This document shows, in pieces, positions 35,375-64,000 of a stretch of 64,000 nt of DNA. The notes beneath the pieces were generated by a model. The model was not told the DNA's origin and ran no database searches. It saw nothing but the letters and a program-made list of their open reading frames with translations. Positions within the stretch are counted from its first letter, which is position 1; each line of letters opens with the position of its first letter. The translations under genes were made by a program, and so were the position numbers. The stretch spans positions 230,915 through 294,914 of IMG/VR virus record IMGVR_UViG_3300027621_000003; one strand, given 5' to 3'.

Positions 35375-35375
35375 T

Positions 35376-38901: not shown

Positions 38902-39291
38902 TTAAATAACATTTGTATGATTTCTTCCATCGTTCCAATAACTAACATCACCATACCATGTGAATATCTCATCACCTTTCTTTATTTCTCGATGGGAAAT
39001 AAATTGAAATGTTTTGTTTTCAAGGTTTGATATCCAATACGCATTTGCATTTTCGTGATGATTATAAATCCCACCATAACCTAAAGGAAGTACTTGCTCT
39101 TTCCATTCACCACCTTGTGGCCAATTAAATCTATAATCAATTAATAAAGAAGTTACTTCTCCTTTTTCTATTGGTAAAGTTAAGACAGGACATTCTTCAA
39201 ACACTTCGCCTTCCATAATATCTTCTTTTGCAAAGACCCCCCATCCATGAACGGGACTTTTATCAACATATATTTTTGGATTGTATATCAT
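38902..39291 (-). CDS. SET-domain protein (lysine methyltransferase)
   Basis: SPVHGWGVFA, GxGGIYNHHENAN, EIKKGDEIFTWYG. Confidence 0.9.
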   Translation of the reverse strand: MIYNPKIYVDKSPVHGWGVFAKEDIMEGEVFEECPVLTLPIEKGEVTSLLIDYRFNWPQGGEWKEQVLPLGYGGIYNHHENANAYWISNLENKTFQFISHREIKKGDEIFTWYGDVSYWNDGRNHTNVI

Positions 39292-39294
39292 AAC

Positions 39295-44030: not shown

Positions 44031-44052
44031 TTTTAATTATTATTATTTTATG

Positions 44053-44835: not shown

Positions 44836-44851
44836 ATTAATGTTTAATTAG

Positions 44852-46068: not shown

Positions 46069-46069
46069 A

Positions 46070-49927: not shown

Positions 49928-49955
49928 GATTTTATTTAAAGTTTTAATGTTGTGT

Positions 49956-50687: not shown

Positions 50688-50751
50688 ATACGTGTTTTTA
50701 TAATTGAAATATAGATTATATATAGTATATTTCAATAAACAAAACACAATT

Positions 50752-53043
50752 ATGATGAAAATATTTGCTCACGGTTCTTATGTTGGAAACACAGGTTACA
50801 ATCAACACACAAGGGATTTTTTTAGGCATTTGTCAGAACATGCACAAATTAAATTTAGGAATTTTACTGTGGGTAACACATGGAAAGGATTTAATTCAAC
50901 CCCTCACGATAATGAACCATATATTGATGATGTAGATAAAAAATTATTATACGAACAAATTTTATGGAATGAAGACCGTACTCGTGGTAATCATAAAATG
51001 TATATTGATAATTCAAAAGAATTCTTACCCGATGTTAATATTGTTCTGTCAGAAACAAATCATCATATATTTTATGATACTTATTATGGTCCAAAAATTG
51101 CATATAATGTTTGGGAGTCAACATTACAACCCTTATCATACTTTGAAGAATTAAAGAAATTTGATGAGTTTTGGGTACCATCTAAATGGCAAAAAGAATG
51201 TACCATAAAACAAGGGTACGACCCAGAAAAAATTAAAATAGTTCCTGAGGGTGTTGATATTCATACATTTTTCCCTGAAACTGTCGAACCATTAGATGAA
51301 TACAATGACGGTAGATTTAAATTTTTATTATTTGGTCGATGGGATTATCGTAAATCAACAAAAGAAATAATTGAATGGTTTTTAAAAACATTTTCCGAAG
51401 ACGAACCAGTTGATTTGGTGGTGTCTATTGATAATATGTTTGGAGAACATTTGGACGGATTTAAAACTACTGAAGAAAGATTAGAACATTATGGTTTAAC
51501 AGATAAAAGAATTAAAATTGTACACTTTCCTAAAAGAGAAGACTATATAAAATACCTTAAAACTGGTCATGTATTTGTATCTTGCGCAAGGTCTGAAGGA
51601 TGGAATCTACCATTAATAGAATCAATGGCTTGTGGTACACCTTCAATATATTCTAATTGTTCGGGTCAATTAGAATTTGCAGAAGGTAAAGGATTTCCTG
51701 TTAATGTTTTACATGAAACACTTGCAGACGCTGATTCATATGCAAGATATAAAATGAGTGAATTACCTGGAAATTATTATGAACCTGATTTTAATGAATT
51801 ATCAAAAGTAATGAGATATGTTTATGAAAATTATGATGAGTGTAAAATAAAATCATTAAAAGAATCTGAAGAAATTAGAAATAATTTTAATTGGGAGCAT
51901 GTTGCAGAAATTGGAATCAAAACTTTAAATGATTTTATGGAAAGAAAGCCTTGGTTAAATAAAAAAATTAAAGAAAATAAAATTACCGTAACTTATTTAG
52001 ATGGTCCAAAAGTTGAAATTTCAGGTGATGAAAAAAAAGAATATTTTGTTGAATTTATTAATAAGGATACTGATAAAGTTATACATTCACAAACAATATC
52101 TAATAATATGTGGGTGGCTAGTAATAAAAAATACTACATACCTTGGGTAATTAAAATAAATGGTCAAGTTTATGATGTTTTTGATTTAAAAGATAAATCA
52201 GTAATAATTTCTTTGGAGTCAAAATCATTAGGCGATACAATAGCTTGGTCACCATATGTTGTTGAATTTCAAAAAAAACATAATTGTAAAGTTTATTTTT
52301 CAACTTTTAAAAATGAATTTTTTGAAGATTTAGAGTCTTATAAAAATATTGAATTTATAAAACCTGGCGATTCTCGTAATTGTTACTCCGTTTATAGAAT
52401 TGGTTGGTTTAAAAAAGATAACACTTGGGAAAATTTTGATAATCACCCAAATCAACCTAATCTGATTCCACTACAACAAACGGCATCAGATATTCTTGGT
52501 TTAGAATTTAAAGAATTAAATTTTGGTATTAATTTTAAAAAGAAAGATAGACCAATTAAAAACAAATATGTTGTGTTTGGTCCAAATGCAACTGCGGGTT
52601 GTAAAGAATGGGATTATAATAATTGGGTATCATTGTCTAAATTAATCAAAGAACTTGGTTATGACGTTGTTACATTAACTCAACACCCGTATAACATAGA
52701 AGGTGTTATTAATGTTTGGGGGGAACCTTTAGATGAGGTAGCTAATTATTTATATCACGCAGAAACATTTATTGGGTTAGGTTCAGGTCTATCTTGGTTT
52801 AATTGGGGTTTAGGTAAACACACATATATGATTAATGGTTTTGCTAAATCAGAACACGAATTTACTTCAAATGTAACAAGAGTATATAATGAGGGTGTTT
52901 GTATTTTTTGTTGGAATGACGAAGTGTTTGTTTTTGATAGTGGTGATTGGGATTGGTGTCCTGTTTATAAAGGAACTAAAAAACAACATATTTGTCAAAA
53001 ATCAATAACACCACTAAAAGTTTTTAACATTTTAAATTTATGA
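50752..53043 (+). CDS. GT4 glycosyltransferase fused to AAH/TibC-type O-heptosyltransferase
   Basis: GT4: RKST, EGWNLPLIESMACGTP. AAH part: beta module, SLGDTIAWSPY, CIFCWN...WCP...CQKSITP Cys cluster. Confidence 0.8.
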   Translation: MMKIFAHGSYVGNTGYNQHTRDFFRHLSEHAQIKFRNFTVGNTWKGFNSTPHDNEPYIDDVDKKLLYEQILWNEDRTRGNHKMYIDNSKEFLPDVNIVLSETNHHIFYDTYYGPKIAYNVWESTLQPLSYFEELKKFDEFWVPSKWQKECTIKQGYDPEKIKIVPEGVDIHTFFPETVEPLDEYNDGRFKFLLFGRWDYRKSTKEIIEWFLKTFSEDEPVDLVVSIDNMFGEHLDGFKTTEERLEHYGLTDKRIKIVHFPKREDYIKYLKTGHVFVSCARSEGWNLPLIESMACGTPSIYSNCSGQLEFAEGKGFPVNVLHETLADADSYARYKMSELPGNYYEPDFNELSKVMRYVYENYDECKIKSLKESEEIRNNFNWEHVAEIGIKTLNDFMERKPWLNKKIKENKITVTYLDGPKVEISGDEKKEYFVEFINKDTDKVIHSQTISNNMWVASNKKYYIPWVIKINGQVYDVFDLKDKSVIISLESKSLGDTIAWSPYVVEFQKKHNCKVYFSTFKNEFFEDLESYKNIEFIKPGDSRNCYSVYRIGWFKKDNTWENFDNHPNQPNLIPLQQTASDILGLEFKELNFGINFKKKDRPIKNKYVVFGPNATAGCKEWDYNNWVSLSKLIKELGYDVVTLTQHPYNIEGVINVWGEPLDEVANYLYHAETFIGLGSGLSWFNWGLGKHTYMINGFAKSEHEFTSNVTRVYNEGVCIFCWNDEVFVFDSGDWDWCPVYKGTKKQHICQKSITPLKVFNILNL

Positions 53044-53936
53044 AAAATTGTTTAATCACTTTTAATGACGCATCAACTGGTTTAGGTGATGTAATCGCAT
53101 TAATGCCATATTTAGATAAATTTAGAGTATCCCAAAACCTTGAAATTTATTTTAAAGTAAAGAATATTTTTTTTTCTGAATTATTTAAAAAGACATTTCC
53201 TGAAATAATTTTTATAGATGAAACTGATAATAAAAATTACGACAAAGAAATCATACTTAAACATAAATGGGATAAACCTCTTCAACAAGTTTTTGCTGAA
53301 CAATTAGGATTTATCAATTCTGAATATATTAGACCAAAAGTTGATGATGTTTTAACAGATAGAACTATTAAAAATAAATATATTGTGATTAGTATACAAT
53401 CTACATCCCAACTTAAATATTGGAACCATGTAAATGGTAAACAAGAACAACTCACCTCTAAGAATTGGGATATATTATGTAAAATGTTACGAAAATCAGG
53501 ATATACCCCAATATGTGTTGATAATTATGAAAGTTTTGGAATTCCTAATTTTAGAAATTATGTACCAAAAAGTTGTGTAAAAAAATTAGGTTTACCATTA
53601 AAAGATGTTATGGAAATTATAAAACATTGCGAATTCTTTATTGGATTGTCATCAGGTATTTCTTGGTTAGCACATGCTATGAACAAACCTGTTGCTATGA
53701 TTTCAAATTTTACAGAAGATTGGCACGAATTTGATTTAAATATAAATGATTATAAAAGAATAATAAATAAAAGTGTATGTCATGGTTGTTGGAATATTGT
53801 TGGTAAAGAATTTGATTTTGAATACGATGATTGGTATTGGTGTCCCAAGCATAAGGACACACCAAGGCAATTTGAATGTCATACATCAATAACACCTGAA
53901 ATGGTATATGAAGAAATTAAAGATTGGTTATTATGA
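53040..53936 (+). CDS. AAH/TibC-type O-heptosyltransferase (GT9-like)
   Basis: GLGDVIA, LKYWN, FIGLSSGISWLA, CHGCWN...WCPKHKDTPRQFECHTSITP. Confidence 0.85.
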   Translation: MKNCLITFNDASTGLGDVIALMPYLDKFRVSQNLEIYFKVKNIFFSELFKKTFPEIIFIDETDNKNYDKEIILKHKWDKPLQQVFAEQLGFINSEYIRPKVDDVLTDRTIKNKYIVISIQSTSQLKYWNHVNGKQEQLTSKNWDILCKMLRKSGYTPICVDNYESFGIPNFRNYVPKSCVKKLGLPLKDVMEIIKHCEFFIGLSSGISWLAHAMNKPVAMISNFTEDWHEFDLNINDYKRIINKSVCHGCWNIVGKEFDFEYDDWYWCPKHKDTPRQFECHTSITPEMVYEEIKDWLL

Positions 53937-54310
53937 ATATAGAAGTATCACACGGGGAGATTGTTGATAAGTTAACAATCCTTCAAATTAAAAAAGAAAA
54001 CATTACTGACCCAATTAAATTGGATAATATTGTAAAAGAATATAACTATCTTTTATCTGTAGTTGAGAATGATTTGGGAATTTCAACTGAATCTCCTGAG
54101 TATTTGGAACTATTATCTATTAACAAAGAACTTTGGGTTATTGAAGATGATATTAGAGATAAAGAAAGAGTTAAAGAATTTGATGAGGATTTTGTTAAAT
54201 TGGCACGTTCGGTTTATTACACAAACGATGTTCGTGCTAAAATTAAAAAAGAAATTAATTTGAAATATTCTTCAGGATTTGTTGAAGAAAAATCATACCA
54301 ATCTTACTGA
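53933..54310 (+). CDS. DUF6165-like protein
   Basis: GEIVDKLTILQIK, INKELWVIEDDIR, LARSVYYTNDVRA, EEKSY. Confidence 0.75.
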   Translation: MNIEVSHGEIVDKLTILQIKKENITDPIKLDNIVKEYNYLLSVVENDLGISTESPEYLELLSINKELWVIEDDIRDKERVKEFDEDFVKLARSVYYTNDVRAKIKKEINLKYSSGFVEEKSYQSY

Positions 54311-55537
54311 TAGTTCTTTTGATTGTAGGATGTTATCCTCAATAGAACAATAAGTCCAAGAACCATATCTACCAATAGAAAATAACCCATTAGGGTTATT
54401 TTTTTTGCCCCAACTACTATAAACTTCTTTTGATTCTTTGGTAATATGAACATAGGCAGGATTCATAACAATCATTTGGTGGTCTACTAAATTATGGTCA
54501 TTTATAACCCCCACCCTTGATAAATCTTCTAATATCTTATTCAACAAATCCTCCTCAATAACTCTGTCAGTTTTATCCAAACCAATCTCAACGTACAAAC
54601 TCATTTTATCTGTACCGAAGATATTGTTATAGAATCCAACTCTATAGAATATTTCATCATTAGGATAATACACCCAATTTGAACTGATGTCAGTTGGTTT
54701 ATCAAACCCTAAGTTAAATACAACTACTTTGTTTGATGAAAGGTTATCAACCTTCTCACCTGTAAGTTTCATAAAGGTATCAAACGGCATTGTATTCACC
54801 AATTTATTAAACTTGATATATCCGTTATTTGTTTGAGCAATTTTGTTTTCAAGGTCAATACTGATGATTTCAGTATCCAATAAAATATTATCTTGGTTTA
54901 CTCGTTTGAGTAATGACTTAACAAATTCAACACTACCACCTGTTGGGTATATGAATGTGTCATTATAAGATTCAGACTTGTTTTTGTTTTTGAGTTGAGT
55001 TAATAAGTCATCAAAGTTTGTGGGTTTTGGAAAGAACCTTCCCATTGCATCATAATCCAAATTATTCAAATCACAAGCATATAACTTTTGATTATAAGGT
55101 ATGATGAACTTATTACAAATTGACTCTCCTAGCGTGTTTTTAACAAAGTCTGTGAATGTATTAACCTCACCATTTCCAGTGTTCCTCAGGTCATATAAAC
55201 ACTCAACAAACTCATCTGTTGGTAATTGGTCTATGTTGTTTTGAAATGGAAAATCTATGTATCGGTCTTTATAATATATGTGACTTCTTTTATTAACTGT
55301 AACCACGTCACACTCAATATTCTCTAATACATAATCTTTAATTTCTTGATTGTTAAAGTGAAAGAAGTGACCAGAATAATCCCATACAAAACCATTTCTA
55401 ATTGTTGTTTTGCAATATCCCCCAACCTCAAAATCCTTTTCAACAATTAAATAATTATCCGTATCCAAAAAGGATGCTAATGAAAGTCCTGTTATACCAG
55501 CACCAATAATTAATATGTCACAATTTGTTTGATTCAT
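54293..55537 (-). CDS. FAD-dependent UDP-galactopyranose mutase-like enzyme
   Basis: GAGITG, DYSGHFF, FPFQNNI..LP, FIIPYNQKL, YPTGG, GRYGSWTY follow UGM-family motif order. Confidence 0.7.
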   Translation of the reverse strand: MNQTNCDILIIGAGITGLSLASFLDTDNYLIVEKDFEVGGYCKTTIRNGFVWDYSGHFFHFNNQEIKDYVLENIECDVVTVNKRSHIYYKDRYIDFPFQNNIDQLPTDEFVECLYDLRNTGNGEVNTFTDFVKNTLGESICNKFIIPYNQKLYACDLNNLDYDAMGRFFPKPTNFDDLLTQLKNKNKSESYNDTFIYPTGGSVEFVKSLLKRVNQDNILLDTEIISIDLENKIAQTNNGYIKFNKLVNTMPFDTFMKLTGEKVDNLSSNKVVVFNLGFDKPTDISSNWVYYPNDEIFYRVGFYNNIFGTDKMSLYVEIGLDKTDRVIEEDLLNKILEDLSRVGVINDHNLVDHQMIVMNPAYVHITKESKEVYSSWGKKNNPNGLFSIGRYGSWTYCSIEDNILQSKELSVRLV

Positions 55538-56088
55538 TAATCTTTATAATATGTCCCAAGTTCTCTACCGTGAATATCTTTTGTTCTTTCAAATCTTGGA
55601 TTACCAATTAAGAACATAAATCTCTCATGACTAAAAGTTTCAACATCATGAACAATTAACATTCCGTTATCTTTAACTTTATAGAACCAAAATGCAACCA
55701 ATTCAGGAATTACCTCTTCAAAGTGATATGAGTCGTGGAATACAACATCATATTTTGTTTCATTGTTTAATGCGTAAAGTCCTTCTTGGACAATCCAATT
55801 AACATTAAAATCTTTACACAAAGTTTCTCGTTTATCTTTAAACCCTTTGTGTCCGTCATTATCATATGATGTAACATCAAGTCCTGCCAAACATAATGAA
55901 AATGTTCCATGTCCACCCAAACTACCAACCTCACATGCTGTTCCACCTTTATATATTTTTGACTTCAAATAAATCTCTTTAATGTGAGAAACATCTGTTG
56001 TATTAACAACCGAATAATCAAGTTGTTCTATCTTTAGTAGATTCATCGCATCTTGTGCGGTTAAAAAATCATTTCCGTTAAAACTCAT
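55537..56088 (-). CDS. Class I SAM-dependent methyltransferase
   Basis: EVGSLGG, YDVVFHDSYH, GMLIVHD. Confidence 0.75.
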   Translation of the reverse strand: MSFNGNDFLTAQDAMNLLKIEQLDYSVVNTTDVSHIKEIYLKSKIYKGGTACEVGSLGGHGTFSLCLAGLDVTSYDNDGHKGFKDKRETLCKDFNVNWIVQEGLYALNNETKYDVVFHDSYHFEEVIPELVAFWFYKVKDNGMLIVHDVETFSHERFMFLIGNPRFERTKDIHGRELGTYYKD

Positions 56089-56158
56089 AACATAATAATA
56101 TACAATATTTAAAAATAACAAATAGACATTTTTTTGTTTTAAACTAACATTAATAATA

Positions 56159-56776
56159 ATGAGTATCTACATCATAACCCCCTGTAGTAGGGTTGAACAT
56201 CTTGAAACAATTTCTAAAACAATACCTAATGAATGTATTTGGGTTATTGTTTATGACTCAAACCATAATGACAAAATCCTACCTTATGGTGATATAATTT
56301 TAAGACCAAAAAATGTAAGTGGTAATTATGGTAAGCCTCATATAAATTATGCTTTGGATAATTTAAAATTGACATATTCAGATTGGGTCTATGTCTTAGA
56401 TGATGATAATATTATTCACCCTGAATGGTATGAAAATGTACAATCATTGTGTAATGATTATTATAATGTTTTAAGTTGGGGTCAGTTGTGGAATGATGAC
56501 ACAATGAGATTAAGACCCACTAAACATATGGTGTTCAGAGCTATGGACCAAGCAAGTTATATGTGGAGATATGGATTTCACCCAACCGTTAGATTTGATG
56601 AATCATATTTTGGTGATGGTACGTTTGCAGAAAAATTAGGACAAAACTCCCATTGTATTAACAAGTATCTTAGTTATTACAATTATCTATCTTTGGAATC
56701 TTTCACAAATGAAGAAAAATTAGAATTTGATAGGGGAGTTTTATCTTACTTATCAAGTAAAAACATTTTTATTTAG
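56159..56776 (+). CDS. GT2-like glycosyltransferase
   Basis: IITPCSR, YVLDDDN, 'GDGTFA'. Confidence 0.75.
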   Translation: MSIYIITPCSRVEHLETISKTIPNECIWVIVYDSNHNDKILPYGDIILRPKNVSGNYGKPHINYALDNLKLTYSDWVYVLDDDNIIHPEWYENVQSLCNDYYNVLSWGQLWNDDTMRLRPTKHMVFRAMDQASYMWRYGFHPTVRFDESYFGDGTFAEKLGQNSHCINKYLSYYNYLSLESFTNEEKLEFDRGVLSYLSSKNIFI

Positions 56777-58635
56777 TCGTGTTTAATCCCTAAATTATCT
56801 TGGAAATGTTTTTGATTAGTCAACAATCTTTCTTTTTGACTTTCAAATCTAAAATCATTTAATATTTGCAACAAATATTGATAACCTTCTTCAAATCTTT
56901 TTGTCCAAAAACAAGATACTGATAACTCATCATTATTATAATCTCCATACATATTTTCTTGGATGAATAAAATGTATTTTTCTTTTACATTATTAATGTT
57001 TTTGGATTTTGCGGTTTTTAAATACGAATACCCCTTTTCAAACTCACCGATTAAATTACAATATTTTCCAATATGAAAATGTGGTTCCGCTCTATCATTA
57101 CATAACTTTATTGCCACTAACATTTCAGTTTCAATTTTACTTAAATCATAATTAAGTTTCATCATACAAAGAGCAATCCTCATTTGTGATTCAAAAATCT
57201 CTTCAATCCACCCATCATTTAATTTTGTATATAATCGGTACCATTTAATTGCCTCGTCATACATTTCAGAATCTTGATAACTTTGAGCTGTGTAAAAAAC
57301 TGACCTACTATTTAAATTATCTGGGTCCGATAATAAAGTATCAAAAAATTGTTTTTTTAATTTTTCAGCATCATATAAGAATTTATTTGGGTCAAAAGCT
57401 CTTGAACCAATACCTTCTCCTGATACATAATGATTTCTATTTGTAATATCTTTTGTGATAAAAATTCCTTTTTCTTCACATTTAATAGTTGTATGTGCAA
57501 CACCACAAAATCTCCATGTTAATCTGTTATTAAAAATTATTAGAGCTTTCCATTTTATATCACCACGAGTTACGTTCATATAATAAGCATCTTGACCAAT
57601 GTCATCTTTGGTAAACTCTAAACCATTAACCAATAAATCATCAGCATCCAAATGTAAAACATAATCAGCTTTATCTTTAGCCCGTTTCATCATTAAAGTT
57701 TTATTGTGGTCAAATCCAACCCACTTATCAATGTGTAATTCACCAGGTATTCCTTTTTCTTCAAAGAAATTTTTGACAATCTCACACGTCCTATCAGTTG
57801 AGCCTGTATCACACACAACCCAATAGTCAATATGTTTATAAACAGATTCTAATGTGTTCTGAATACAATGTTCTTCATTTTTACACATAGTTGCAAAACA
57901 CATGGTTGGTCCATCTTTTTTGATTTCAACAGGTTCGTTTTTCCAAACTGCGGATGTAACACTATTTTCTTCAGTATCAGGATTTTCTTTAGTATAGTAA
58001 TATAATGCCAATGAAATCCTTGACATACCATTAGGTGTATTCAAGGGATGTGGATGACCGTGATATGTGTCAGCTTCAGTATTGAAAATAACTACACGGT
58101 TAAATAAGGGTTGAATATCTTGAACCATTGTTGTCATATCTTTATCCCATAATTGTAATGAACCACCCCATTCTTTATTCCAATCTTTATTAAGATATAC
58201 TAATAGATTTATTCTTCTGTAATTATTAGTTACCGCATGTTTTCTTGAGTCGGCATGAATTGATAATTTACCACCTGATTCAATCTTATGCATCCCACCA
58301 CCTAATAATGTTGGGTCGGCAATTAAACCTTCAATCCCTGTTAATTTTTCTAACATACTAATAACATCAGGTGAATTAAAATAATTCAATATTAATTTGG
58401 TGTTAATTGGTAATGTTGTATCCCCATCATTGTTCCAAGGCGAAAAGAATTTTTTAACTTGATGGTCTTTTGAATAATCACTATTATCCCAACCCCAATT
58501 ATTGTGGTTTCTAAAATCATCAATAACACCATTCAACAATGATGGTGGTAAAAAATTATCAACAACCATGTGTGGAAATGGTTGTGCTTGTCTATACTCG
58601 TTAATTTCTTTTTCGGTTACTGTAAAATTTATCAT
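56773..58635 (-). CDS. Fusion: 2OG-Fe(II) oxygenase + GT2 glycosyltransferase + TPR
   Basis: IHAD...YHGHP...RISLALY; MCKNEEH..CDTGSTD..HLDADD; FYTAQSY..AIKWY..RAEP TPR-like helices. Confidence 0.85.
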   Translation of the reverse strand: MINFTVTEKEINEYRQAQPFPHMVVDNFLPPSLLNGVIDDFRNHNNWGWDNSDYSKDHQVKKFFSPWNNDGDTTLPINTKLILNYFNSPDVISMLEKLTGIEGLIADPTLLGGGMHKIESGGKLSIHADSRKHAVTNNYRRINLLVYLNKDWNKEWGGSLQLWDKDMTTMVQDIQPLFNRVVIFNTEADTYHGHPHPLNTPNGMSRISLALYYYTKENPDTEENSVTSAVWKNEPVEIKKDGPTMCFATMCKNEEHCIQNTLESVYKHIDYWVVCDTGSTDRTCEIVKNFFEEKGIPGELHIDKWVGFDHNKTLMMKRAKDKADYVLHLDADDLLVNGLEFTKDDIGQDAYYMNVTRGDIKWKALIIFNNRLTWRFCGVAHTTIKCEEKGIFITKDITNRNHYVSGEGIGSRAFDPNKFLYDAEKLKKQFFDTLLSDPDNLNSRSVFYTAQSYQDSEMYDEAIKWYRLYTKLNDGWIEEIFESQMRIALCMMKLNYDLSKIETEMLVAIKLCNDRAEPHFHIGKYCNLIGEFEKGYSYLKTAKSKNINNVKEKYILFIQENMYGDYNNDELSVSCFWTKRFEEGYQYLLQILNDFRFESQKERLLTNQKHFQDNLGIKHD

Positions 58636-58640: not shown

Positions 58641-59888
58641 TTATTTATAAATGTAGTTTAATATTTCTTCTTCACTATGAAATTTCCTAATAAAAATGTG
58701 GTTTTGAAATTTTTGTGAACAATTCTCATCTTCAACCCAATTCCAATCATGTTTACCCATTTCTATTATTTTTTCATGTATTTGTTTATCGTAATAATCT
58801 CTAATTAATCTTGCTCTTCGGTTTATATCAATTGAGTTATTATCAACAGTAGTGTTTTTATTATTATATTGTATGTATAATACTTTTTTTACATGAATTA
58901 TTTTTGTATTAAGAAATGTCCTTATAATTAATTCCAAATCATCAGCAATTGGTGTATTTTTATTATGTCCACCAATTTCAAGATATTTTTTTCTTTCCCA
59001 CATTCTTACGTGGTCAGGCATACTAATATTGAATCTAATAGTTAACGGATTTATATCAGGGTACCAATGAGCAATTAAATCTTTACCATCAACATTTGTC
59101 CAACTATGACCAGCATATCCAAAATCAAAGTAATTATCATATCTTCCATACCAATCACCTGAAACATTATTGTCATACGTTCTCATATTACCATCCTCAT
59201 ACATTTCACACACATCACTATAAAGAAATCCGGCATCAGGATATTGTAAAATTGCATCATTTGATATTTCTAAACATTGTGATGTTAAAACATCATCATG
59301 GTCTAATTCAACTAACCAATCTCCATCACATAACATAGCAACCCTATTTTTAGCCAATCCAATATTACCACCACTTAATGGATATATTCTATGTGGTTTA
59401 ACACGATAATCTTTATCTTTGAGACCCATTAAAATGTTCCAAGTATTGTCATCAGGTGAATCATCAACAATAACCCATTCCCAATCAGTAAAAGTTTGAT
59501 TTACAATACTTTCATAAGTTCTTAAAATTCTTTCACCCGTATTGTAAGTTGGTGTGAATATTGAAAATTTTGGTCTTATATTTTGACAATTAATAAAAGT
59601 TCCTTGTTTAACAACAACATTAGCCAATTCAATATCACCAATAATATTATCATAATGAATATATTTTGAATTTAATATTTTATCATTAATTGTTATTTTT
59701 TTACCAAACGAAATTATTAAATCGGGCAAGTACTTTGAATAATCTTGGATTAGATTCTCAATATTTTCCAATGAATAAATTGTAACATATTCCAATAAAT
59801 TTTCCTCACAATAAATGTGTGATTGCAATTCATTAATACCTTTTCTATCCCAATTGTATATAATTGCACTGGGTTTTTTTGTTCTCAT
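58641..59888 (-). CDS. GT2 glycosyltransferase with N-terminal extension
   Basis: FSIFTPTYN, IVDDSPD, ELDHDD, ADDLEL. Confidence 0.88.
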   Translation of the reverse strand: MRTKKPSAIIYNWDRKGINELQSHIYCEENLLEYVTIYSLENIENLIQDYSKYLPDLIISFGKKITINDKILNSKYIHYDNIIGDIELANVVVKQGTFINCQNIRPKFSIFTPTYNTGERILRTYESIVNQTFTDWEWVIVDDSPDDNTWNILMGLKDKDYRVKPHRIYPLSGGNIGLAKNRVAMLCDGDWLVELDHDDVLTSQCLEISNDAILQYPDAGFLYSDVCEMYEDGNMRTYDNNVSGDWYGRYDNYFDFGYAGHSWTNVDGKDLIAHWYPDINPLTIRFNISMPDHVRMWERKKYLEIGGHNKNTPIADDLELIIRTFLNTKIIHVKKVLYIQYNNKNTTVDNNSIDINRRARLIRDYYDKQIHEKIIEMGKHDWNWVEDENCSQKFQNHIFIRKFHSEEEILNYIYK

Positions 59889-59893: not shown

Positions 59894-60478
59894 TTATCTT
59901 TCGGTATCAAAAAAGAATGTTTGAAATAATCTACCATCTTCTAAGTTTCTACCAAAATAATCTAATGATGTATGAAAATAATCCGCTCTATACAATACCA
60001 ATCTATTAAACTTGTTTCCCAACATATCAGTCATTTCCCATTTGGTCATGTCTTGGGAATCCAAATATAATCTATCCAACATTTCAAAATCATAACCCCC
60101 ATCACTTTTTAAAGGTGCGGTATGTATACCAGTTTCTCTATGTCTGAATAAACCTGTTCCTGAACTAATAGGTGCGTTTGGTGTTAAAAAACAAACGCCA
60201 GCCCAACTTGTTGTTTGGTCAGCATGCATCCAACTTTTGTCTCGTTGTGTTGCATATTGAAAAGCTCCATTATATTCTTCAGTTGACCATTTTGTTATTT
60301 TACCACCAGCAAAAAATACAATATCTTGTATTAGGTTAACAACACTTTCATTATAAAATGGTTTAGTCCTAAATCCAGGATAATTACCAATCACATTAAA
60401 TTCTTGTTGTAATGCAAATTCTCTCGTTTCGTGTGGGTCATTATAAAAATCATCCACAATTATTGAAGATATAACCAT
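59894..60478 (-). CDS. DUF6445-like 2OG-Fe(II) oxygenase
   Basis: IVDDFY, YPG, MHAD, WAGV, NRLVLY..YFH, RLFQ. Confidence 0.75.
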   Translation of the reverse strand: MVISSIIVDDFYNDPHETREFALQQEFNVIGNYPGFRTKPFYNESVVNLIQDIVFFAGGKITKWSTEEYNGAFQYATQRDKSWMHADQTTSWAGVCFLTPNAPISSGTGLFRHRETGIHTAPLKSDGGYDFEMLDRLYLDSQDMTKWEMTDMLGNKFNRLVLYRADYFHTSLDYFGRNLEDGRLFQTFFFDTER

Positions 60479-60479: not shown

Positions 60480-61067
60480 TTATCTGTATTGTCCTCCTCC
60501 GACCCACAAAACTAAACTCTTTCTATTTCCACTTGTGAGTGGAACAACTCTATGTAATAAAAATGATGGGAATACCACAACATTACCTTTTCCTCTTGGA
60601 ATTTTAGTGTGGTCACTTCCAACCATAATTTCCAAATCTCCGCCAACATATTCTTCAGGGTCAGATAATTGGATAGTAATAGATATTTTTCTATGCGAAA
60701 TTTTACCAGGTCCAATATCCAAATGCCAATCATAATGACCACCATTACCTTCGTATTCAGTATATTGAATATTATCAATAATGGAGTTTAAATCAAATTT
60801 CCAAATAGTATTATTTGCCTCAATAACATGAGTCATTATTCGGTCAATAACCCATTCCCATTTAGAATCAAAAGGTAACCATTTAATGTTACTTTTTCTA
60901 AATTTATCAGTATTATCTTCATCAACTACAAGTGCTTTAACAAATGGGTATTCTTTTGCATCTTCAACAATTTTGTCAATTTCGGCTGAAGTAAATCCGG
61001 CATTAAACCAATAATAATTTGTTTGGTTAATGTCTTCTGATGGTAGGAAAATTGGTTTGAGTTCCAT
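60480..61067 (-). CDS. PKHD-type (prolyl-hydroxylase-like) 2OG-Fe(II) oxygenase
   Basis: YDWHLD, RKISITIQL, GGDL, FPSFLLHRV, RKSLVLW. Confidence 0.9.
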   Translation of the reverse strand: MELKPIFLPSEDINQTNYYWFNAGFTSAEIDKIVEDAKEYPFVKALVVDEDNTDKFRKSNIKWLPFDSKWEWVIDRIMTHVIEANNTIWKFDLNSIIDNIQYTEYEGNGGHYDWHLDIGPGKISHRKISITIQLSDPEEYVGGDLEIMVGSDHTKIPRGKGNVVVFPSFLLHRVVPLTSGNRKSLVLWVGGGQYR

Positions 61068-61348: not shown

Positions 61349-62035
61349 TTAGTTAACTGTTACTGCAAAATATAATCCTGTAAATCCTAAATAGGCGGCA
61401 ACATCTTCTGTTCCAGAACCAGTTGAGGTAAATGTAGTTCCTCCAGGACCTGCATTTACTGTACCACTACTAACTTTAGCATTTCCATTTATACTGATGT
61501 TACAAGTACCACCAGCAAATGTCGGAGATAACCCATTAATTATAACTTTCCAATATCCTCTAAAAATAATAGGGTCATTAGTTGTACTAGCTTGAAGGGC
61601 GCCAGTGCTGCCAGGGGCATTAACAACTCCAGTATTTGCTTGAAGATACATATACGTAATAGAATCGTCATATAATTCAACAGTAACATCAATTTCATTA
61701 TCTACGGGAAATGGTGGTGGGGGGGTAGATACTAAATTATTAACTACATCTAATGTTACTTGATAAGTAGAGTTATCATAAAAATATGTTACTCCTTTTA
61801 AATCGTCCATATCATCAGGGTTGCCAACCGCATTTGTCTCATAAATTCTATTTAAACCCGAATTTTCACCTTTTCCATACGCATTATACGAAATTGAGTT
61901 GCTTCCATTGGGTCCCGCAAAATAAGAATAAAAACTAATATCATTTAAACTAACAACTCCACTACCGGGGTATCCTCCGTTAGCTTCACCATATATATTA
62001 TTTGCTAATGCAATATTTGTTGTTGGAATTGCCAT
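61349..62035 (-). CDS. Probable virion/fibre-associated beta-rich protein
   Basis: 228 aa, G/N/T-rich, TAATG-coupled to the fibre gene. Confidence 0.55.
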   Translation of the reverse strand: MAIPTTNIALANNIYGEANGGYPGSGVVSLNDISFYSYFAGPNGSNSISYNAYGKGENSGLNRIYETNAVGNPDDMDDLKGVTYFYDNSTYQVTLDVVNNLVSTPPPPFPVDNEIDVTVELYDDSITYMYLQANTGVVNAPGSTGALQASTTNDPIIFRGYWKVIINGLSPTFAGGTCNISINGNAKVSSGTVNAGPGGTTFTSTGSGTEDVAAYLGFTGLYFAVTVN

Positions 62036-63999
62036 TACTCTTTATTAATTTGTTTTTTAAGTTCTTTTACTTCATTTGAAAGTTCTTTAATCGCTTCAAT
62101 TAATACTGCTGTTAATTTTTCGTATTTAACTGCTTTGTATCCATTATCACGAGTAGTTACAATTTCAGGGAATACTTTTTCAACTTCTTGAGCGATTACA
62201 CCAATATCATGTCCTTCATTTTCATGAATTCCTACCATTGGTATCCAATCAAATTCATATCCACCTAATTGATTTATTTTACTTAAAGCTCCTTCAATTA
62301 ATACTTTATCAGCCTTTAATCTTTCATCTGAAGAATAGAATGCTATTACATCATTAGTTGCTCTAATTAAACCTGCGGTTGTTGGTGAACTTGTACCTAC
62401 ACCCAACGCTCCTGTCAAACTAACAGTGGTACCATTATCTGTAATTGAACTATCACCAATAGTGGTTGTGCTTGTAAATTTAACAACTCTGTTGTTTGTT
62501 CCTGATACTGAAGCTCCTGATGCACCTTGTGCTCCTTGAGGTCCTCCCGCTCCTTGTGCTCCTGTTGAACCTGTACCAGTTGCTCCTTGAGCTCCTTGTG
62601 GTCCTCCAGGTCCTTGTGGTCCAAGAGCTCCTTGAGCTCCCGCTGGTCCTTGAGGTCCCAATGGTCCTGTCGCTCCTTGTGCTCCTGTTGGTCCTGTAGC
62701 TCCTTGTGGTCCTTGAGGTCCCAATGGTCCTGTCGCTCCTTGTGCTCCTGTACCTCCAACAGCTCCTTGTGCTCCTTGGAATCCTTGAGGTCCTGGAGGT
62801 CCTATTGCTCCTTGTGCTCCTACAGGTCCTGGTGCTCCTGTTGAACCAGTAGCTCCTTGTGCTCCTACAGGTCCTTGAGGTCCTAATGGTCCTACCGCTC
62901 CTTGAGCTCCTGTTGGTCCTTGTGGTCCTGCTGGTCCTTGAGGTCCCAATGGTCCTACCGCTCCTTGTGCTCCTGTTGGTCCTTGAGGTCCCAATGGTCC
63001 TACTGCTCCTTGTGCTCCTGTTGGTCCTTGTGGTCCTAATGGTCCTACCGCTCCCTGAGCTCCTGTTGCTCCTACCGCTCCTTGAGCTCCCTGAAGTCCT
63101 GGTGCTCCCTGAGGTCCTAACGCACCTTGTGCTCCCTGAGGTCCCAATGGTCCTACAGCACCTTGTGCTCCTACCGGTCCTGGTGCTCCCTGTGGTCCTA
63201 CCGCTCCTTGTGCTCCTACCGGTCCTTGTGGTCCTAATGGTCCTACCGCTCCTTGAGCTCCTGTTGGTCCTTGTGGTCCTACCGCTCCTTGAGCTCCTAC
63301 CGGTCCTGTTGGTCCTTGTGGTCCTAATGGTCCTACCGCTCCTTGAGCTCCTGTTGGTCCTTGAGGTCCCAATGGTCCTACCGCTCCTTGAGCTCCTGTT
63401 GGTCCTTGTGGTCCTACCGCTCCTTGAGCTCCTGTTGGTCCTTGTGGTCCCAATGGTCCTACTGCTCCTTGTGCTCCTGTAGCTCCTACCGCTCCCTGAG
63501 CTCCCTGAAGTCCTGGTGCTCCCTGAGGTCCTATCGCTCCTTGAGCTCCTTGTGGTCCTAACGGTCCTACCGCTCCTTGAGCTCCTACCGGTCCTGGTGC
63601 TCCCTGTGGTCCTACCGCTCCCTGAGCTCCCTGAGGTCCCAATGGTCCAGTAGCTCCTTGTGCTCCCTGAGGTCCCAATGGTCCAGTAGCTCCTTGTGCT
63701 CCCTGAGGTCCCAATGGTCCAGTTGCTCCTTGTGCTCCTGTAGCTCCTACCGCTCCCTGAGCTCCCTGAGGTCCAGTTGCTCCTTGTGCACCCTGAGGTC
63801 CTAATGGTCCTACCGCTCCCTGAGCTCCTTGAGGTCCAGTTGCTCCTTGTGCTCCAGTAACACTAATACCTGAAGAACCTGATGTTCCCGAAGAACCTGA
63901 AGAACCACTTGAACCTGAAGTTCCGCTAGTTCCTGATGAACCACTTGAACCTGATGTTCCTGAACTTCCACTTGAACCCGATGTTCCTGAAGAACCTGA
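62035..63999 (-). CDS. Collagen-like tail fibre with C-terminal peptidase S74 intramolecular chaperone (partial; start lies beyond the window)
   Basis: Frame stays open from 63714 to the window edge; Gly-X-Y repeats; SSDERLK...[12 protein letters not shown]...[14 protein letters not shown]. Confidence 0.9.
62510..63855 (-). repeat. Collagen Gly-X-Y repeat (about 150 triplets; [15 protein letters not shown])
   Basis: 9-nt periodic coding repeat with one short interruption near the C-terminal end. Confidence 0.92.
63871..63999 (-). repeat. Gly-Ser-Ser / Gly-Thr-Ser triplet repeat
   Basis: [16 protein letters not shown]... continuing to the window edge. Confidence 0.9.
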
Positions 64000-64000
64000 T

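What the first reader, a model, noticed from the sequence alone, without database searches (positions are those of the whole stretch)
56773..58635. Hydroxylase-glycosyltransferase-TPR fusion
One polypeptide joins a complete 2OG-Fe(II) oxygenase (HAD..H..R), a GT2 (DTGSTD, HLDADD) and TPR-like helices. Established: hydroxylate-then-glycosylate fusions occur in animal PLOD3/LH3 and mimivirus L230, and GT2-TPR proteins commonly glycosylate proteins. Inference: the enzyme creates a hydroxyl on a protein residue and caps it with sugar, with the TPRs recognising the substrate.
Basis: partly seen in the sequence, partly recalled or inferred. Interest (0 to 1): 0.65.

Follow-up and report, generated by a model that had tools for sequence, protein, structure and literature searches.

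The report
Phage hydroxylase–glycosyltransferase beside collagen-like fibre
A 295-kb tailed phage encodes one protein that joins a prolyl-hydroxylase-like oxygenase to a peptide-type glycosyltransferase, in a gene cassette just downstream of its only collagen-like tail-fibre gene, so it probably decorates the phage's own fibre, though this is untested.

Summary
Window 56773-58635 (-) is one 620-aa ORF with three parts: a 2OG-Fe(II) oxygenase (res 1-220), a GT2/GT-A domain (240-410) and eleven TPR-like helices (411-615). Catalytic residues are conserved. More than 120 independent assemblies carry the full-length fusion, so it is not an assembly artefact.

The genome is a ~295-kb myovirus-like jumbo phage. 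The oxygenase is of the Tpa1/OGFOD1/PHD prolyl-hydroxylase type (Z 19-22), not the PLOD/L230 lysyl-hydroxylase type (Z ~12). The GT2-TPR half resembles the SunS/ThuS peptide glycosyltransferases.

The gene sits in a conserved cassette: OX2, DUF6445, GT2b, [OX1-]GT2-TPR, FAD enzyme. The cassette lies 3.4 kb downstream of the phage's single collagen-like, S74-chaperone fibre gene. That fibre has (GSS/GTS)n and GPQ/GAQ repeats, no Lys and no Cys. The surrounding island encodes only soluble proteins and includes TibC/Aah-type protein O-heptosyltransferase homologues.

Most relatives carry GT2-TPR without the oxygenase, some beside Pro-free collagens. I therefore favour two separate modifications of one fibre substrate (Ser/Thr glycosylation plus hydroxylation) over strict hydroxylate-then-cap. 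In about 10 of 55 relatives the GT2-TPR instead lies in a replication module next to Mom genes, so a DNA-modification rival survives at low probability. This is a new variant of a known kind, and no biochemistry exists for it.

The parts
56773..58635 (-). P0001, the 620-aa fusion gene (oxygenase, GT2, TPR-like helices)
   Evidence: ORF; domains; model; full-length homologues
57976..58635 (-). OX1 domain (res 1-220): 2OG-Fe(II) oxygenase of the Tpa1/OGFOD1/PHD type, with H127, D129, H192/H194, R206, S208
   Evidence: Pfam PF13640, E 2.3e-18. Domain model pLDDT 94. VIA-align: Tpa1 Z 22.3, OGFOD1 21.3, DdPhyA 19.8. Residues invariant in A1 and A3
57919..57975 (-). Flexible linker (res 221-239)
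   Evidence: pLDDT below 50
57406..57918 (-). GT2 / GT-A catalytic domain (res 240-410), with D276...D281, D330-A-D332-D333 and H381
   Evidence: Pfam PF00535. PDB sequence hits to GmaR and ThuS. Conservation
56776..57405 (-). TPR-like helical repeat domain (res 411-620)
   Evidence: 11 helices in the model. Together with the GT domain it aligns over about 400 columns to SunS/ThuS. Weak TPR_2 and NlpI sequence hits
58641..59888 (-). GT2b, a 415-aa GT2 five nt upstream of the fusion gene. It is the recurrent partner of the OX1 domain
   Evidence: Pfam PF00535, E 5.6e-19. 54% identical to the GT2 that overlaps a stand-alone OX1 in L070-L073. Fused to OX1 in L059 and L055
59894..60478 (-). DUF6445 protein, the most frequent neighbour of the GT2-TPR gene
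   Evidence: Pfam PF20043. Present in 25 of 55 loci. Weak local similarity to the 2OG-oxygenase distal-His motif
60480..61067 (-). OX2, a second 195-aa 2OG-Fe(II) oxygenase (PKHD/YbiX-like)
   Evidence: Pfam PF13640, E 3.5e-14. NCBIfam PRK05467. With OX1 it is one of only two PF13640 domains in the genome
61128..62035 (-). Two ORFs of unknown function (72 aa and 228 aa) between the fibre gene and the cassette
   Evidence: No family hits. The positional equivalent in L015 carries a Laminin_G_3 domain
62035..64000 (-). C-terminal 654 codons of the collagen-like fibre gene: (GSS)n tail, about 148 [12 protein letters not shown] triplets, and an S74 intramolecular chaperone. The gene runs off the contig end and resumes at G000:1-2248
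   Evidence: Pfam Collagen E 2.8e-67 and Peptidase_S74 E 6.3e-16. Sequences. Triplet statistics. Only collagen-like gene in the genome. L015 holds both repeat types in one ORF
54293..55537 (-). FAD-dependent amine-oxidase / UDP-galactopyranose-mutase-like enzyme, the second most frequent neighbour of GT2-TPR
   Evidence: Pfam. NCBIfam PRK07208 and weak UDP-GALP_mutase. Present in 21 of 55 loci
55537..56776 (.). Split GT-like/methyltransferase gene. The methyltransferase half is on the minus strand (55537-56121); the GT-like half is inverted onto the plus strand (56159-56776)
   Evidence: One intact 386-aa gene in L015, L016 and L018; split by an inversion here and in L014
50704..53936 (+). Two Aah/TibC-type protein O-heptosyltransferase homologues, the first fused to a GT4 domain
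   Evidence: NCBIfam TIGR04414: 229.7 bits (cut-off 200) and 193.5 bits

Best explanation
P0001 is a soluble, bifunctional protein-modifying enzyme of a ~295-kb contractile-tailed phage. It belongs to a conserved fibre-modification cassette: OX2, DUF6445, GT2b, [OX1-]GT2-TPR, FAD enzyme. In this lineage the cassette is transcribed right after the tail-fibre gene(s). The GT2-TPR half most likely transfers a sugar from a nucleotide sugar to Ser/Thr hydroxyls of the unfolded collagen-like shaft (GSS/GTS/GAT/GPT triplets), as C. difficile SgtA does on BclA3, with the TPR-like helices holding the substrate chain. The tethered OX1 half most likely hydroxylates a residue of the same substrate. Proline is the best guess, because the domain is of the Tpa1/OGFOD1/PHD type and the shaft carries 65 X-position prolines. 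Fusion keeps the two activities on one client. Shown: the architecture, the conserved catalytic residues, the fold relationships, the gene context and its conservation. Inferred: the substrate, the residue types, the sugar, and whether the new hydroxyl is itself glycosylated (I consider that less likely).
For: Host genome:
- Phage identity rests on a tail sheath (phrog_23, E 1e-55) and a DNA polymerase, in a virus record of 294,914 bp rated 98% complete.

Fold relationships:
- The GT2 plus helical half aligns to the SunS/ThuS peptide glycosyltransferases (E 1e-14, about 400 columns).
- It also hits GmaR, the flagellin O-GlcNAc transferase, by sequence.
- OX1 ranks with protein prolyl hydroxylases: Tpa1 Z 22.3, OGFOD1 21.3, DdPhyA 19.8, PPHD 19.1, PHD2 18.6.

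Context in this genome:
- The genome has exactly one collagen-like gene.
- It has exactly two PF13640 oxygenase domains.
- All three lie within 6 kb of each other.
- The gene string from the fibre gene to P0001 is co-directional, with gaps of 1-60 nt.

Conservation of the context:
- Synteny [S74 fibre gene(s)], OX2, DUF6445, GT2b, [OX1-]GT2-TPR recurs in L015, L017, L019, L020, L024, L026, L036, L066 and L033. The fibre always lies 2-4.5 kb upstream on the same strand.
- In L017 the cassette sits between the fibre genes and the tail sheath gene.
- Collagens beside GT2-TPR are always Ser/Thr-rich and never contain Lys.

The island points to a protein acceptor:
- It holds Aah/TibC-type protein O-heptosyltransferase homologues above the curated cut-off.
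- None of its 25 ORFs between 37.7 and 62 kb has a membrane segment, so it encodes no Wzx, Wzy or exporter.

Independent domain linkages:
- OX1 is fused to GT2b in L055 and L059, overlaps GT2b in L070-L073, and follows GT2-TPR as an overlapping separate gene in L063.

Precedent:
- SgtA is a GT-A plus TPR enzyme encoded next to bclA3. It adds beta-O-GlcNAc to Thr and Ser of collagen repeats (PMC7157674).
Against: - No biochemical or proteomic data exist; the substrate rests on gene neighbourhood only.
- A fibre or collagen gene is in view in only 15 of 55 related loci.
- In about 10 loci (L022, L023, L028-L031 and others) the stand-alone GT2-TPR plus FAD-enzyme pair sits in the replication module, next to MazG-like, Mom-family and GT4 genes.
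- Three large relatives keep their collagen genes more than 30 kb away.
- OX2 and OX1 also occur beside non-collagenous, Pro-poor fibres (L017, L026, L036). The link between oxygenase and Pro-rich collagen is therefore weak, and it rests on few, related loci.
- PasI and PolD, small-molecule (sugar-nucleoside) oxygenases, are structurally almost as close as the PHDs (Z 18.4).
- One bacterial-MAG homologue of OX1 lies in a polysaccharide-like GT cluster.
- Some OX1 homologues have no GT neighbour at all.
- The complex prediction with a fibre segment gave no answer.
Confidence: 0.45

Rival explanations
1. Strict tandem mechanism. OX1 makes a hydroxy-amino acid, for example hydroxyproline in GPQ/GPL triplets, and the GT2-TPR domain of the same polypeptide glycosylates that new hydroxyl. 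This would parallel Skp1 Hyp-GlcNAc (PhyA then Gnt1), plant Hyp-O-glycans, or Hyl-Glc made by L230.
For: - The covalent fusion is conserved down to 59% identity.
- OX1 is repeatedly fused or adjacent to GT2 enzymes.
- OX1 is structurally close to DdPhyA, the Skp1 prolyl hydroxylase that creates a glycosylation site (Z 19.8; PMC7864055).
- The fibre shaft has 65 X-position prolines.
- A dual-function P4H/GlcNAc-transferase is reported in Pythium (title cited in PMC7864055).
Against: - GT2-TPR at 50-68% identity is a stand-alone gene in about 50 of 56 viral loci.
- Some of these have no OX1-type oxygenase in view, and some sit beside Pro-free collagens (L046, L051). The ancestral acceptor is therefore not a hydroxylase product.
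- L017/L036 (fused) and L026/L066 (unfused) have otherwise identical cassettes.
- The linker is disordered and nothing shows that the two active sites are coupled.
Confidence: 0.15
2. The oxygenase acts on the glycan or on a sugar nucleotide, not on an amino acid. OX1 would tailor a sugar that the neighbouring GTs install, as KdoO does for Kdo or PasI/PolD do for octosyl acids. The GT2-TPR half would extend or initiate the glycan.
For: - PasI and PolD score Z 18.4, nearly tied with PHD2.
- OX1 is most constantly partnered with GT2 enzymes rather than with any one protein substrate.
- The island is rich in sugar-tailoring genes: FkbM methyltransferases, acetyltransferases, an aminotransferase fragment and a UGM-like FAD enzyme.
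Against: - The top five structural neighbours are all protein prolyl hydroxylases.
- The best NCBIfam hit is a peptide-modifying oxygenase, YhhC.
- No sugar-modifying 2OG oxygenase appears among the listed structural hits.
Confidence: 0.15
3. Host-envelope remodelling. The island modifies the host's capsule, LPS or S-layer during infection (superinfection exclusion), as proposed for GT plus 2OGFeDO clusters of jumbo phages and pelagimyophages.
For: - Published readings of similar clusters take this view (PMC7824862; PMC7029224).
- GT2b weakly resembles TuaG, WcaA and EpsE.
- PHROG labels call these genes 'moron/AMG'.
- One OX1 homologue sits in a WbsX/GT2 cluster on a cyanobacterial MAG contig.
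Against: - The island encodes no membrane protein, flippase, polymerase or polyprenyl-phosphate transferase.
- The cassette is embedded in the tail structural module, next to fibre genes, across diverged phages.
- The SunS/GmaR-like and TibC-like enzymes are protein glycosyltransferases.
- No close GT2-TPR relative was found in 185,579 prokaryotic species genomes with the patterns used.
Confidence: 0.12
4. DNA hypermodification. The enzyme hydroxylates and then glycosylates a base in phage DNA, in the style of base J or TET-plus-GT systems.
For: In about 10 related loci the stand-alone GT2-TPR plus FAD-enzyme pair lies between ribonucleotide reductase and PolB genes, next to MazG-like, Mom-family (E 3.5e-45) and GT4 genes.
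Against: - OX1 is of the PHD/Tpa1 type. AlkB homologues score only Z 12-13, and no TET/JBP enzyme is among the 50 rows listed.
- This genome has no thymidylate-synthase homologue and no Mom gene. The Tet_JBP search also found nothing, but its control was blank, so that result is uninformative.
- Known phage DNA GT-A enzymes resemble JGT/TarP and travel with ThyS or 5mYOX genes (10.1101/2023.12.21.572611; PMC13326640).
- All three domains are acidic, pI 5.5-5.8.
- In this genome the context is the fibre gene.
Confidence: 0.06
5. Maturation of a small secreted glycopeptide (glycocin/RiPP-like), given the SunS and YhhC affinities.
For: The weak NCBIfam best hits are SunS (S-glycosyltransferase) and YhhC (cyclophane-peptide oxygenase). 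The fold match to SunS/ThuS points the same way.
Against: - Scores are far below the equivalog cut-offs (31 against 350 bits; 38 against 150 bits).
- The island encodes no precursor-like Cys-rich peptide, no exporter, no protease and no radical-SAM enzyme.
- The only small ORF (72 aa) has no family match.
Confidence: 0.03

Closest known systems
C. difficile SgtA (with the BclA3 collagen-like exosporium protein)
   Same: A GT-A (WcaA-like GT2) catalytic domain followed by TPRs. It is encoded next to a collagen-like gene. It adds O-linked sugar to Thr and Ser inside GXY repeats in the cytoplasm (PMC7157674). This is the best functional analogue of the GT2-TPR half.
   Different: SgtA has no oxygenase domain and is bacterial, not viral.
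SunS / ThuS glycocin S-glycosyltransferases (PDB 7msn, 7msk) and GmaR
   Same: These are the best solved structural matches to residues ~240-615 (GT2 plus C-terminal helical repeats, E 1e-14). They are also sequence hits. All are protein or peptide glycosyltransferases.
   Different: Identity is 14-17%. The NCBIfam SunS score is 31 bits against a cut-off of 350. SunS and ThuS glycosylate Cys, and the candidate fibre has no Cys.
Mimivirus L230 / animal PLOD3 (LH3)
   Same: One viral polypeptide with a 2OG oxygenase and a glycosyltransferase, in a genome that encodes collagen-like proteins.
   Different: - Domain order is opposite: L230 has an N-terminal GT and a C-terminal LH (PMC9614988).
- The oxygenase lineage differs: Z 12.5 and 12.2 to L230 and LH3, against 22.3 to Tpa1.
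- The GT lineage differs.
- The substrate residue (Lys) is absent from the local collagen.
- The resemblance is convergent, not homologous.
Skp1 modification pathway (PhyA prolyl 4-hydroxylase then Gnt1), including the Pythium dual-function P4H/GlcNAc-transferase
   Same: A PHD-type prolyl hydroxylase creates Hyp that a cytoplasmic GT-A enzyme then glycosylates. DdPhyA is among the closest structures to OX1 (Z 19.8). A P4H-GT fusion is reported (title cited in PMC7864055).
   Different: The GT there is Gnt1 (GT60 by my recollection), without TPRs, and the substrate is Skp1 in eukaryotes. The Pythium paper was not held, so its domain order could not be checked.
Tpa1 / OGFOD1 / bacterial PPHD protein prolyl hydroxylases (COG3751)
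   Same: These are the closest folds to OX1 over about 200 residues. JGI pipelines already label the homologues 'Tpa1-like proline 4-hydroxylase'.
   Different: Identity is 16-22%. Their substrates are translation factors (Rps23, EF-Tu). None is fused to a glycosyltransferase.
Mycobacteriophage virion glycosylation
   Same: Phage-encoded GT2 enzymes O-glycosylate the phage's own structural proteins (Freeman et al. 2023, as cited in PMC12619734).
   Different: The targets there are the C-termini of capsid and tail-tube subunits. No oxygenase, TPR or collagen-like fibre is involved.

Membership tests
2OG-Fe(II) oxygenase superfamily (PF13640) | Jelly-roll fold with an HxD...H iron triad and a 2OG-binding Arg | tested here: met
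   Pfam E 2.3e-18. H127, D129, H192/H194, R206 and S208 are invariant in A1 and A3. Domain model pLDDT 94.
PHD / Tpa1 / OGFOD1-type protein prolyl hydroxylases | The closest structural relatives are members of this clade, over the whole domain | tested here: met
   Tpa1 Z 22.3 (207 aligned, rmsd 3.1); OGFOD1 21.3; DdPhyA 19.8; TaPHD 19.2; PPHD 19.1; PHD2 18.6. The small-molecule enzymes PasI and PolD follow at 18.4.
PHD / Tpa1 / OGFOD1-type protein prolyl hydroxylases | Hydroxylates peptidyl-proline | not testable with these tools
   This needs an enzyme assay or mass spectrometry.
PLOD / LH3 / L230 collagen lysyl hydroxylase-glycosyltransferases | C-terminal PLOD-type LH domain and N-terminal GT domain(s) | tested here: not met
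   The order here is oxygenase first, GT second. The L230 LH domain scores Z 12.5 and LH3 Z 12.2, about 10 Z units below the top hits. No PLOD or L230 chain appears among PDB sequence hits at E<=1.
PLOD / LH3 / L230 collagen lysyl hydroxylase-glycosyltransferases | Substrate has Lys in the Y position of GXY repeats | tested here: not met
   0 Lys in 317 triplets of the adjacent fibre, and 0-3 Lys in the collagens of related loci.
GT2 (GT-A fold, inverting, DxD) | Pfam GT2 match with a conserved DxD and N-terminal Asp motifs | tested here: met
   PF00535 at 30.1 bits, above the 23.3 cut-off. D276, D281 and D330-A-D332-D333 are conserved in about 30/31 rows.
SunS-family peptide S-glycosyltransferases (TIGR04195) | Score above the equivalog cut-off | tested here: not met
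   31.1 bits against a cut-off of 350. The overall fold and architecture do match, so it 'works like' a SunS enzyme but is not a member.
SunS-family peptide S-glycosylation chemistry | Cys acceptor in the substrate | tested here: not met
   The candidate fibre has no Cys. This applies only if the fibre is the substrate.
TPR repeat proteins | Significant TPR sequence profile match | tested here: inconclusive
   TPR_2 E 0.048 and TPR_8 E 0.35, both below cut-off. NlpI E ~0.1. The model does show 11 antiparallel helices at 411-615, superposable on the SunS/ThuS C-terminal domain.
SgtA-like collagen-repeat O-glycosyltransferases | GT-A plus TPR enzyme encoded beside a collagen-like gene with Ser/Thr in the repeats | tested here: met
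   Architecture. A fibre or collagen gene lies 2-4.5 kb upstream in 15 of 55 loci, and all the collagens are Ser/Thr-rich.
SgtA-like collagen-repeat O-glycosyltransferases | Sequence homology to SgtA, and transfer to Thr/Ser of GXY peptides | not tested
TET/JBP or AlkB nucleic-acid dioxygenases | Closest fold is TET/JBP or AlkB | tested here: not met
   AlkB homologues score Z 12.3-13.4, and no TET/JBP enzyme is among the 50 rows listed. The Tet_JBP family search of the genome was blank, but so was its control.

The most novel reading that the evidence does not exclude
A bacteriophage makes hydroxyproline (or another hydroxy-amino acid) in its own collagen-like tail fibre and glycosylates that hydroxyl with the same polypeptide. 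This would be the first Hyp-O-glycosylation system outside eukaryotes and a convergent viral re-invention of the collagen hydroxylate-then-glycosylate logic. It would be embedded in a larger virion-glycosylation island that also uses TibC-like heptosyltransferases.
Probability: 0.15. Interest if true: 0.8.

Novelty: new variant of a known kind. Interest (0 to 1): 0.55.

Why it matters
Phage virion glycosylation is known from only a few cases, and post-translational hydroxylation of phage or bacterial collagen-like proteins is essentially unexplored.

This enzyme family is abundant: more than 1300 homologues of the fusion or its GT half, and more than 4280 of the oxygenase alone. It sits in a compact, all-soluble cassette next to its probable client, a 1400+ residue collagen-like fibre with over 160 GSS/GTS triplets. 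That makes a directly testable system of enzyme plus substrate, expressible in E. coli. It could answer three questions:
- how large aquatic phages decorate their receptor-binding fibres;
- what the very common, unexplained 'Tpa1-like' 2OG oxygenases of aquatic phages do;
- whether bacterial-type collagens can be hydroxylated or glycosylated enzymatically, which is also of interest for recombinant collagen biomaterials.

If instead the family acts on DNA or host polysaccharide, the fusion would define a new branch of those pathways.

Tried and rejected
- Ribosomal or tRNA context (a possible SAR11 hypervariable region): no Rfam or tRNA hits in the window. The GC-rich end is the collagen gene.
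- Assembly artefact joining two genes: rejected by the many independent full-length homologues.
- Complex prediction of P0001 with fibre residues 20-100: 'no answer' (score 0.00). This is neither support nor evidence against binding.
- Scan of 185,579 prokaryotic species genomes with the GT2-TPR alignment: 70 pattern matches, none confirmed. No cellular context could be obtained.
- The paper on the Pythium dual-function P4H/GlcNAc-transferase (PMC6774341) is not held.
- 'Oxygenases track Pro-rich collagens': first seen in 5 against 5 loci, then weakened. The same oxygenases also sit beside Pro-poor, non-collagenous S74 fibres in L017, L026 and L036.
- 'The cassette is always beside fibre genes': rejected, because about 10 loci place GT2-TPR in a replication module with Mom genes.
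- DUF6445 as a clear 2OG oxygenase: hhalign gives only a 33-column local match (E 0.003, probability 10%), which is inconclusive.
- Literature searches found no description of a P4H-like/GT2-TPR fusion in phages.


Full report
1. THE OBSERVATION

Window 56773-58635 on the minus strand is a single 620-codon ORF, P0001.

Domains by sequence:
- Pfam places a 2OG-FeII_Oxy_3 domain at residues 115-214 (E 2.3e-18).
- Pfam places a GT2 domain at residues 250-334 (E 5.5e-7).
- Only a sub-threshold TPR_2 hit falls at 447-473.
- NCBIfam gives weak, far-below-cut-off best hits to the peptide oxygenase YhhC and the peptide S-glycosyltransferase SunS.

Domains by structure:
- An AlphaFold model built on a 34-row alignment has mean pLDDT 85.
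- It shows a jelly-roll domain (1-220), a disordered linker (221-239), a GT-A domain (245-410) and eleven paired helices (411-615).

H127-x-D129, H192/H194, R206 and S208 hold in all 15 oxygenase rows. D276...D281, D330-A-D332-D333 and H381 hold in about 30 of 31 GT rows.

The fusion is not an artefact. A word-indexed search returned 1301 homologues, and the best 120 are all 617-628-aa full-length fusions from independent ENA, JGI, Logan and NCBI assemblies. Viral contigs carry the same fusion at 90, 85, 60 and 59% identity.

2. THE ORGANISM

- The window is the last 64 kb of a 294,914-bp IMG/VR virus record rated 98% complete.
- The record encodes a tail sheath (phrog_23, E 1e-55) and a phage-type DNA polymerase. 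It is therefore a jumbo, contractile-tailed phage with about 32% GC.
- No rRNA or tRNA lies in the window.

3. THE NEIGHBOURHOOD

Both ends of the contig lie inside minus-strand Gly-X-Y coding repeats.

The fibre gene:
- The 3' end of the contig holds the C-terminal 654 codons of a collagen-like protein. It has a short (GSS)n run, about 148 triplets dominated by [15 protein letters not shown] and GPT, and a C-terminal Peptidase_S74 intramolecular-chaperone domain typical of phage fibres.
- The 5' end of the contig holds a 290-residue N-terminal domain followed by 154 GSS/GTS/GES triplets.
- The relative L015 has both repeat types in one ORF. I therefore read these as one gene of more than 1400 codons spanning the junction of a circularly permuted genome.
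- It is the only collagen-like gene in the genome.
- The repeats contain no Lys and the protein has no Cys. They carry 65 X-position and 6 Y-position prolines, and very many Ser/Thr.

Downstream of the fibre gene, co-directional and almost without gaps, lie:
- two unknown ORFs;
- OX2, a 195-aa PKHD/YbiX-like 2OG oxygenase;
- a DUF6445 protein;
- GT2b, a 415-aa GT2;
- P0001;
- a split GT-like/methyltransferase gene;
- an FAD enzyme resembling amine oxidases and UDP-galactopyranose mutase.

The two PF13640 domains here are the only ones in the genome.

Further along, the island encodes:
- two homologues of the Aah/TibC autotransporter protein O-heptosyltransferases (229.7 bits against a cut-off of 200, and 193.5 bits);
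- five FkbM methyltransferases, a nucleotidyltransferase, an aminotransferase fragment and two hexapeptide acetyltransferases.

None of the 25 ORFs between 37.7 and 62 kb has a membrane segment. The island therefore has no flippase, polymerase or exporter of its own.

4. WHAT EACH HALF RESEMBLES

The oxygenase half:
- Folded alone (pLDDT 94), the domain was aligned against 48,161 PDB representatives.
- The ranking is Tpa1 (Z 22.3), OGFOD1 (21.3), Dictyostelium PhyA (19.8), Trichoplax PHD (19.2), Pseudomonas PPHD (19.1) and PHD2 (18.6). All are protein prolyl hydroxylases.
- The nucleoside-antibiotic enzymes PasI and PolD follow at 18.4.
- Collagen P4Hs score 12-15. The L230 and LH3 lysyl hydroxylases score 12.5 and 12.2. 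AlkB homologues score about 13.

The glycosyltransferase half:
- With its helical domain, it aligns over about 400 columns to the glycocin S-glycosyltransferases SunS and ThuS (E 1e-14).
- By sequence it hits GmaR, the flagellin O-GlcNAc transferase.
- In BFVD the same GT2-plus-helices fold occurs in many giant viruses and uncultured tailed phages, none of them characterised.

Both halves therefore look like enzymes that act on polypeptides. Neither half is related to the corresponding half of PLOD3 or L230, whose domain order is also the reverse (PMC9614988).

5. COMPARATIVE GENOMICS

Fifty-six viral loci encode a relative.
- Only five carry the N-terminal oxygenase fusion.
- In about fifty the GT2-TPR module is a 380-440-aa stand-alone gene.

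The oxygenase domain appears in several other arrangements:
- as a separate gene overlapping the end of the GT2-TPR gene (L063);
- fused to the C-terminus of a GT2b homologue (L059), or of GT2b plus a methyltransferase (L055);
- as a stand-alone gene overlapping a downstream GT2b that is 54% identical to the window's (L070-L073).

The oxygenase alone has more than 4280 stand-alone relatives. Some of these have no GT neighbour.

I clustered the neighbours of GT2-TPR across 55 loci. The recurrent partners are:

| Neighbour family | Loci |
|---|---|
| DUF6445 | 25 |
| FAD enzyme | 21 |
| OX2 | 12 |
| Fibre / collagen | 10 by clustering; 15 with a profile plus repeat search |
| GT4 / TibC-like | 9 |

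Wherever a fibre gene is in view, it lies 2-4.5 kb upstream on the same strand.

The order [S74 fibre gene(s)], OX2, DUF6445, GT2b, [OX1-]GT2-TPR, FAD enzyme is kept in phages whose GT2-TPR is only 60% identical. There the fibres are three tandem non-collagenous S74 proteins, and the tail sheath gene follows (L017, L036, L026, L066). L017/L036 (fused) and L026/L066 (unfused) differ essentially by the presence of the oxygenase domain.

Collagens next to GT2-TPR never contain Lys and are always Ser/Thr-rich. Two of them (L046, L051) have no proline at all.

Whole-record searches show collagen genes in all six other large records tested. They lie within 10 kb of the GT2-TPR gene in three records and more than 30 kb away in the other three.

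6. THE COMPLICATION

In about ten loci (L022, L023, L028-L031 and others) the stand-alone GT2-TPR plus FAD-enzyme pair lies in the replication module instead. The order there is gp32, RecA, exonuclease, DnaB and both RNR subunits, then GT2-TPR, the FAD enzyme, a MazG-like protein, two or three Mom-family paralogues (E 3.5e-45), a GT4 and PolB.

That context is what one expects of a DNA-hypermodification cluster.

For the window's phage the DNA reading is weak, for these reasons:
- It has no thymidylate-synthase homologue and no Mom gene.
- No TET/JBP match was found, but the control for that family was blank, so this is uninformative.
- The oxygenase is not of the TET/JBP or AlkB type.
- Known phage DNA GT-A enzymes resemble JGT/TarP and travel with ThyS or 5mYOX genes.
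- All three domains are acidic.

Even so, the neighbourhood argument for a fibre substrate holds for one clade of the family, not for all of it.

7. MECHANISM

What I consider shown:
- P0001 is a genuine, conserved three-domain protein with intact catalytic motifs.
- Its oxygenase is of the protein-prolyl-hydroxylase type.
- Its GT2-plus-helices half is of the SunS/GmaR type.
- In this phage it is part of a soluble cassette transcribed with the single collagen-like, S74-chaperone fibre gene.

What I infer (confidence 0.45):
- The cassette modifies the fibre before or during trimerisation.
- The GT2-TPR half O-glycosylates Ser/Thr of the GXY shaft, as SgtA does on BclA3 (PMC7157674), with the helical repeats holding the extended chain.
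- The tethered oxygenase hydroxylates the same client, most plausibly at proline.

Its closest precedents are the Skp1 Hyp-glycosylation pathway and a reported Pythium P4H/GlcNAc-transferase fusion (title cited in PMC7864055; the paper itself is not held). Two facts argue that the GT's acceptor is not created by the oxygenase. The GT2-TPR module is usually oxygenase-free, and it sits beside Pro-free collagens in some relatives.

Other rivals:
- the oxygenase tailors a sugar (0.15);
- the island remodels the host envelope, the published default reading of such clusters (PMC7824862, PMC7029224; 0.12);
- DNA hypermodification (0.06);
- RiPP maturation (0.03).

8. NOVELTY AND VERDICT

Automated pipelines already name the two domains ('Tpa1-like proline 4-hydroxylase/glycosyltransferase'). 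I found no paper describing this fusion, its cassette or its link to phage fibres.

It is not a member of the PLOD/L230 family and not a SunS equivalog. It is a new domain combination built from known kinds of protein-modifying enzymes, so I rate it a new variant of a known kind.

Interest is moderate to high (0.55). The family is abundant, the enzyme and its candidate substrate are adjacent and soluble, and the outcome would bear on phage virion glycosylation and on the many unexplained 2OG oxygenases of aquatic phages. All functional statements remain inference.

9. WHAT DID NOT WORK

- The complex prediction with a fibre segment gave no answer.
- The scan of prokaryotic genomes found nothing.
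- The apparent correlation between oxygenases and Pro-rich collagens did not hold once non-collagenous fibres were considered.

Noticed in passing
window 62035-64000 (-) together with G000:C1:1-2248 (L002:2-2248:-): Both contig ends lie in Gly-X-Y coding repeats of what is probably one fibre gene of more than 1400 codons. It has a 290-aa N-domain, at least 169 GSS/GTS/GES triplets, about 148 [12 protein letters not shown] triplets, and an S74 chaperone. The assembly evidently broke in the repeat of a circular or permuted genome. It is the only collagen-like gene in 295 kb.
   Followed up: yes
window 55537-56776: A 386-aa GT-like/methyltransferase gene is intact and co-directional with the fusion gene in L015, L016 and L018. 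Here and in L014 it is split by an inversion of about 620 bp. The N-terminal half now reads on the plus strand (56159-56776, 205 aa) and ends 4 nt inside the stop region of P0001. No long flanking inverted repeats were found.
   Followed up: partly
window 50704-53043 (+) and 53040-53936 (+): Two homologues of the Aah/TibC autotransporter protein O-heptosyltransferases (TIGR04414: 229.7 and 193.5 bits, cut-off 200). The first is fused to a GT4 domain. Such enzymes are unusual in a phage, and they heptosylate Ser in repetitive proteins.
   Followed up: partly
window 38902-50747 (-): A sugar-tailoring island on the minus strand. It holds a SET-domain protein, five FkbM methyltransferase paralogues, DUF6625, a nucleotidyltransferase with a kinase-like tail, a 214-aa DegT aminotransferase fragment, and two hexapeptide (PglD-like) acetyltransferases. 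All are predicted to be soluble.
   Followed up: partly
window 59894-60478 (-); 25 of 55 related loci: DUF6445 (PHROG label 'minor coat protein') is the commonest neighbour of the GT2-TPR gene. It shows a weak 33-column match to the '...FNRxVxF...H' distal-His region of the oxygenase domain, so it may be a divergent or inactive jelly-roll oxygenase.
   Followed up: partly
L023:569-17153 (likewise L022, L028-L031): Stand-alone GT2-TPR plus FAD enzyme embedded in a replication module and followed by a MazG-like protein, two or three Mom-family paralogues and a GT4. This may be an undescribed DNA-hypermodification cluster.
   Followed up: partly
L074:7001-9271, L076:6001-8259: Stand-alone homologues of the oxygenase domain (53-54% identity) lie directly upstream of a tyrosinase gene, near SET-domain, PhoD and acetyltransferase genes, on viral-looking contigs. 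The oxygenase family is therefore not always paired with glycosyltransferases.
   Followed up: no
L017:3787-4605: A sulfotransferase gene lies between the three tandem S74 fibre genes and the oxygenase/GT cassette. This hints that fibre or glycan sulfation belongs to the same modification module in that lineage.
   Followed up: no
window 62859-63482 (+): A 207-aa ORF, extremely hydrophobic by the simple scan, lies antisense to the collagen repeats. It is a by-product of the repeat composition and is very unlikely to be a gene.
   Followed up: yes
window 9253-10629 (-) and 22286-24727 (-): A leucine-rich-repeat protein and an SbcC/Rad50-like ATPase lie elsewhere in the window. Most other large ORFs (for example 30721-37679) have no Pfam match.
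   Followed up: no
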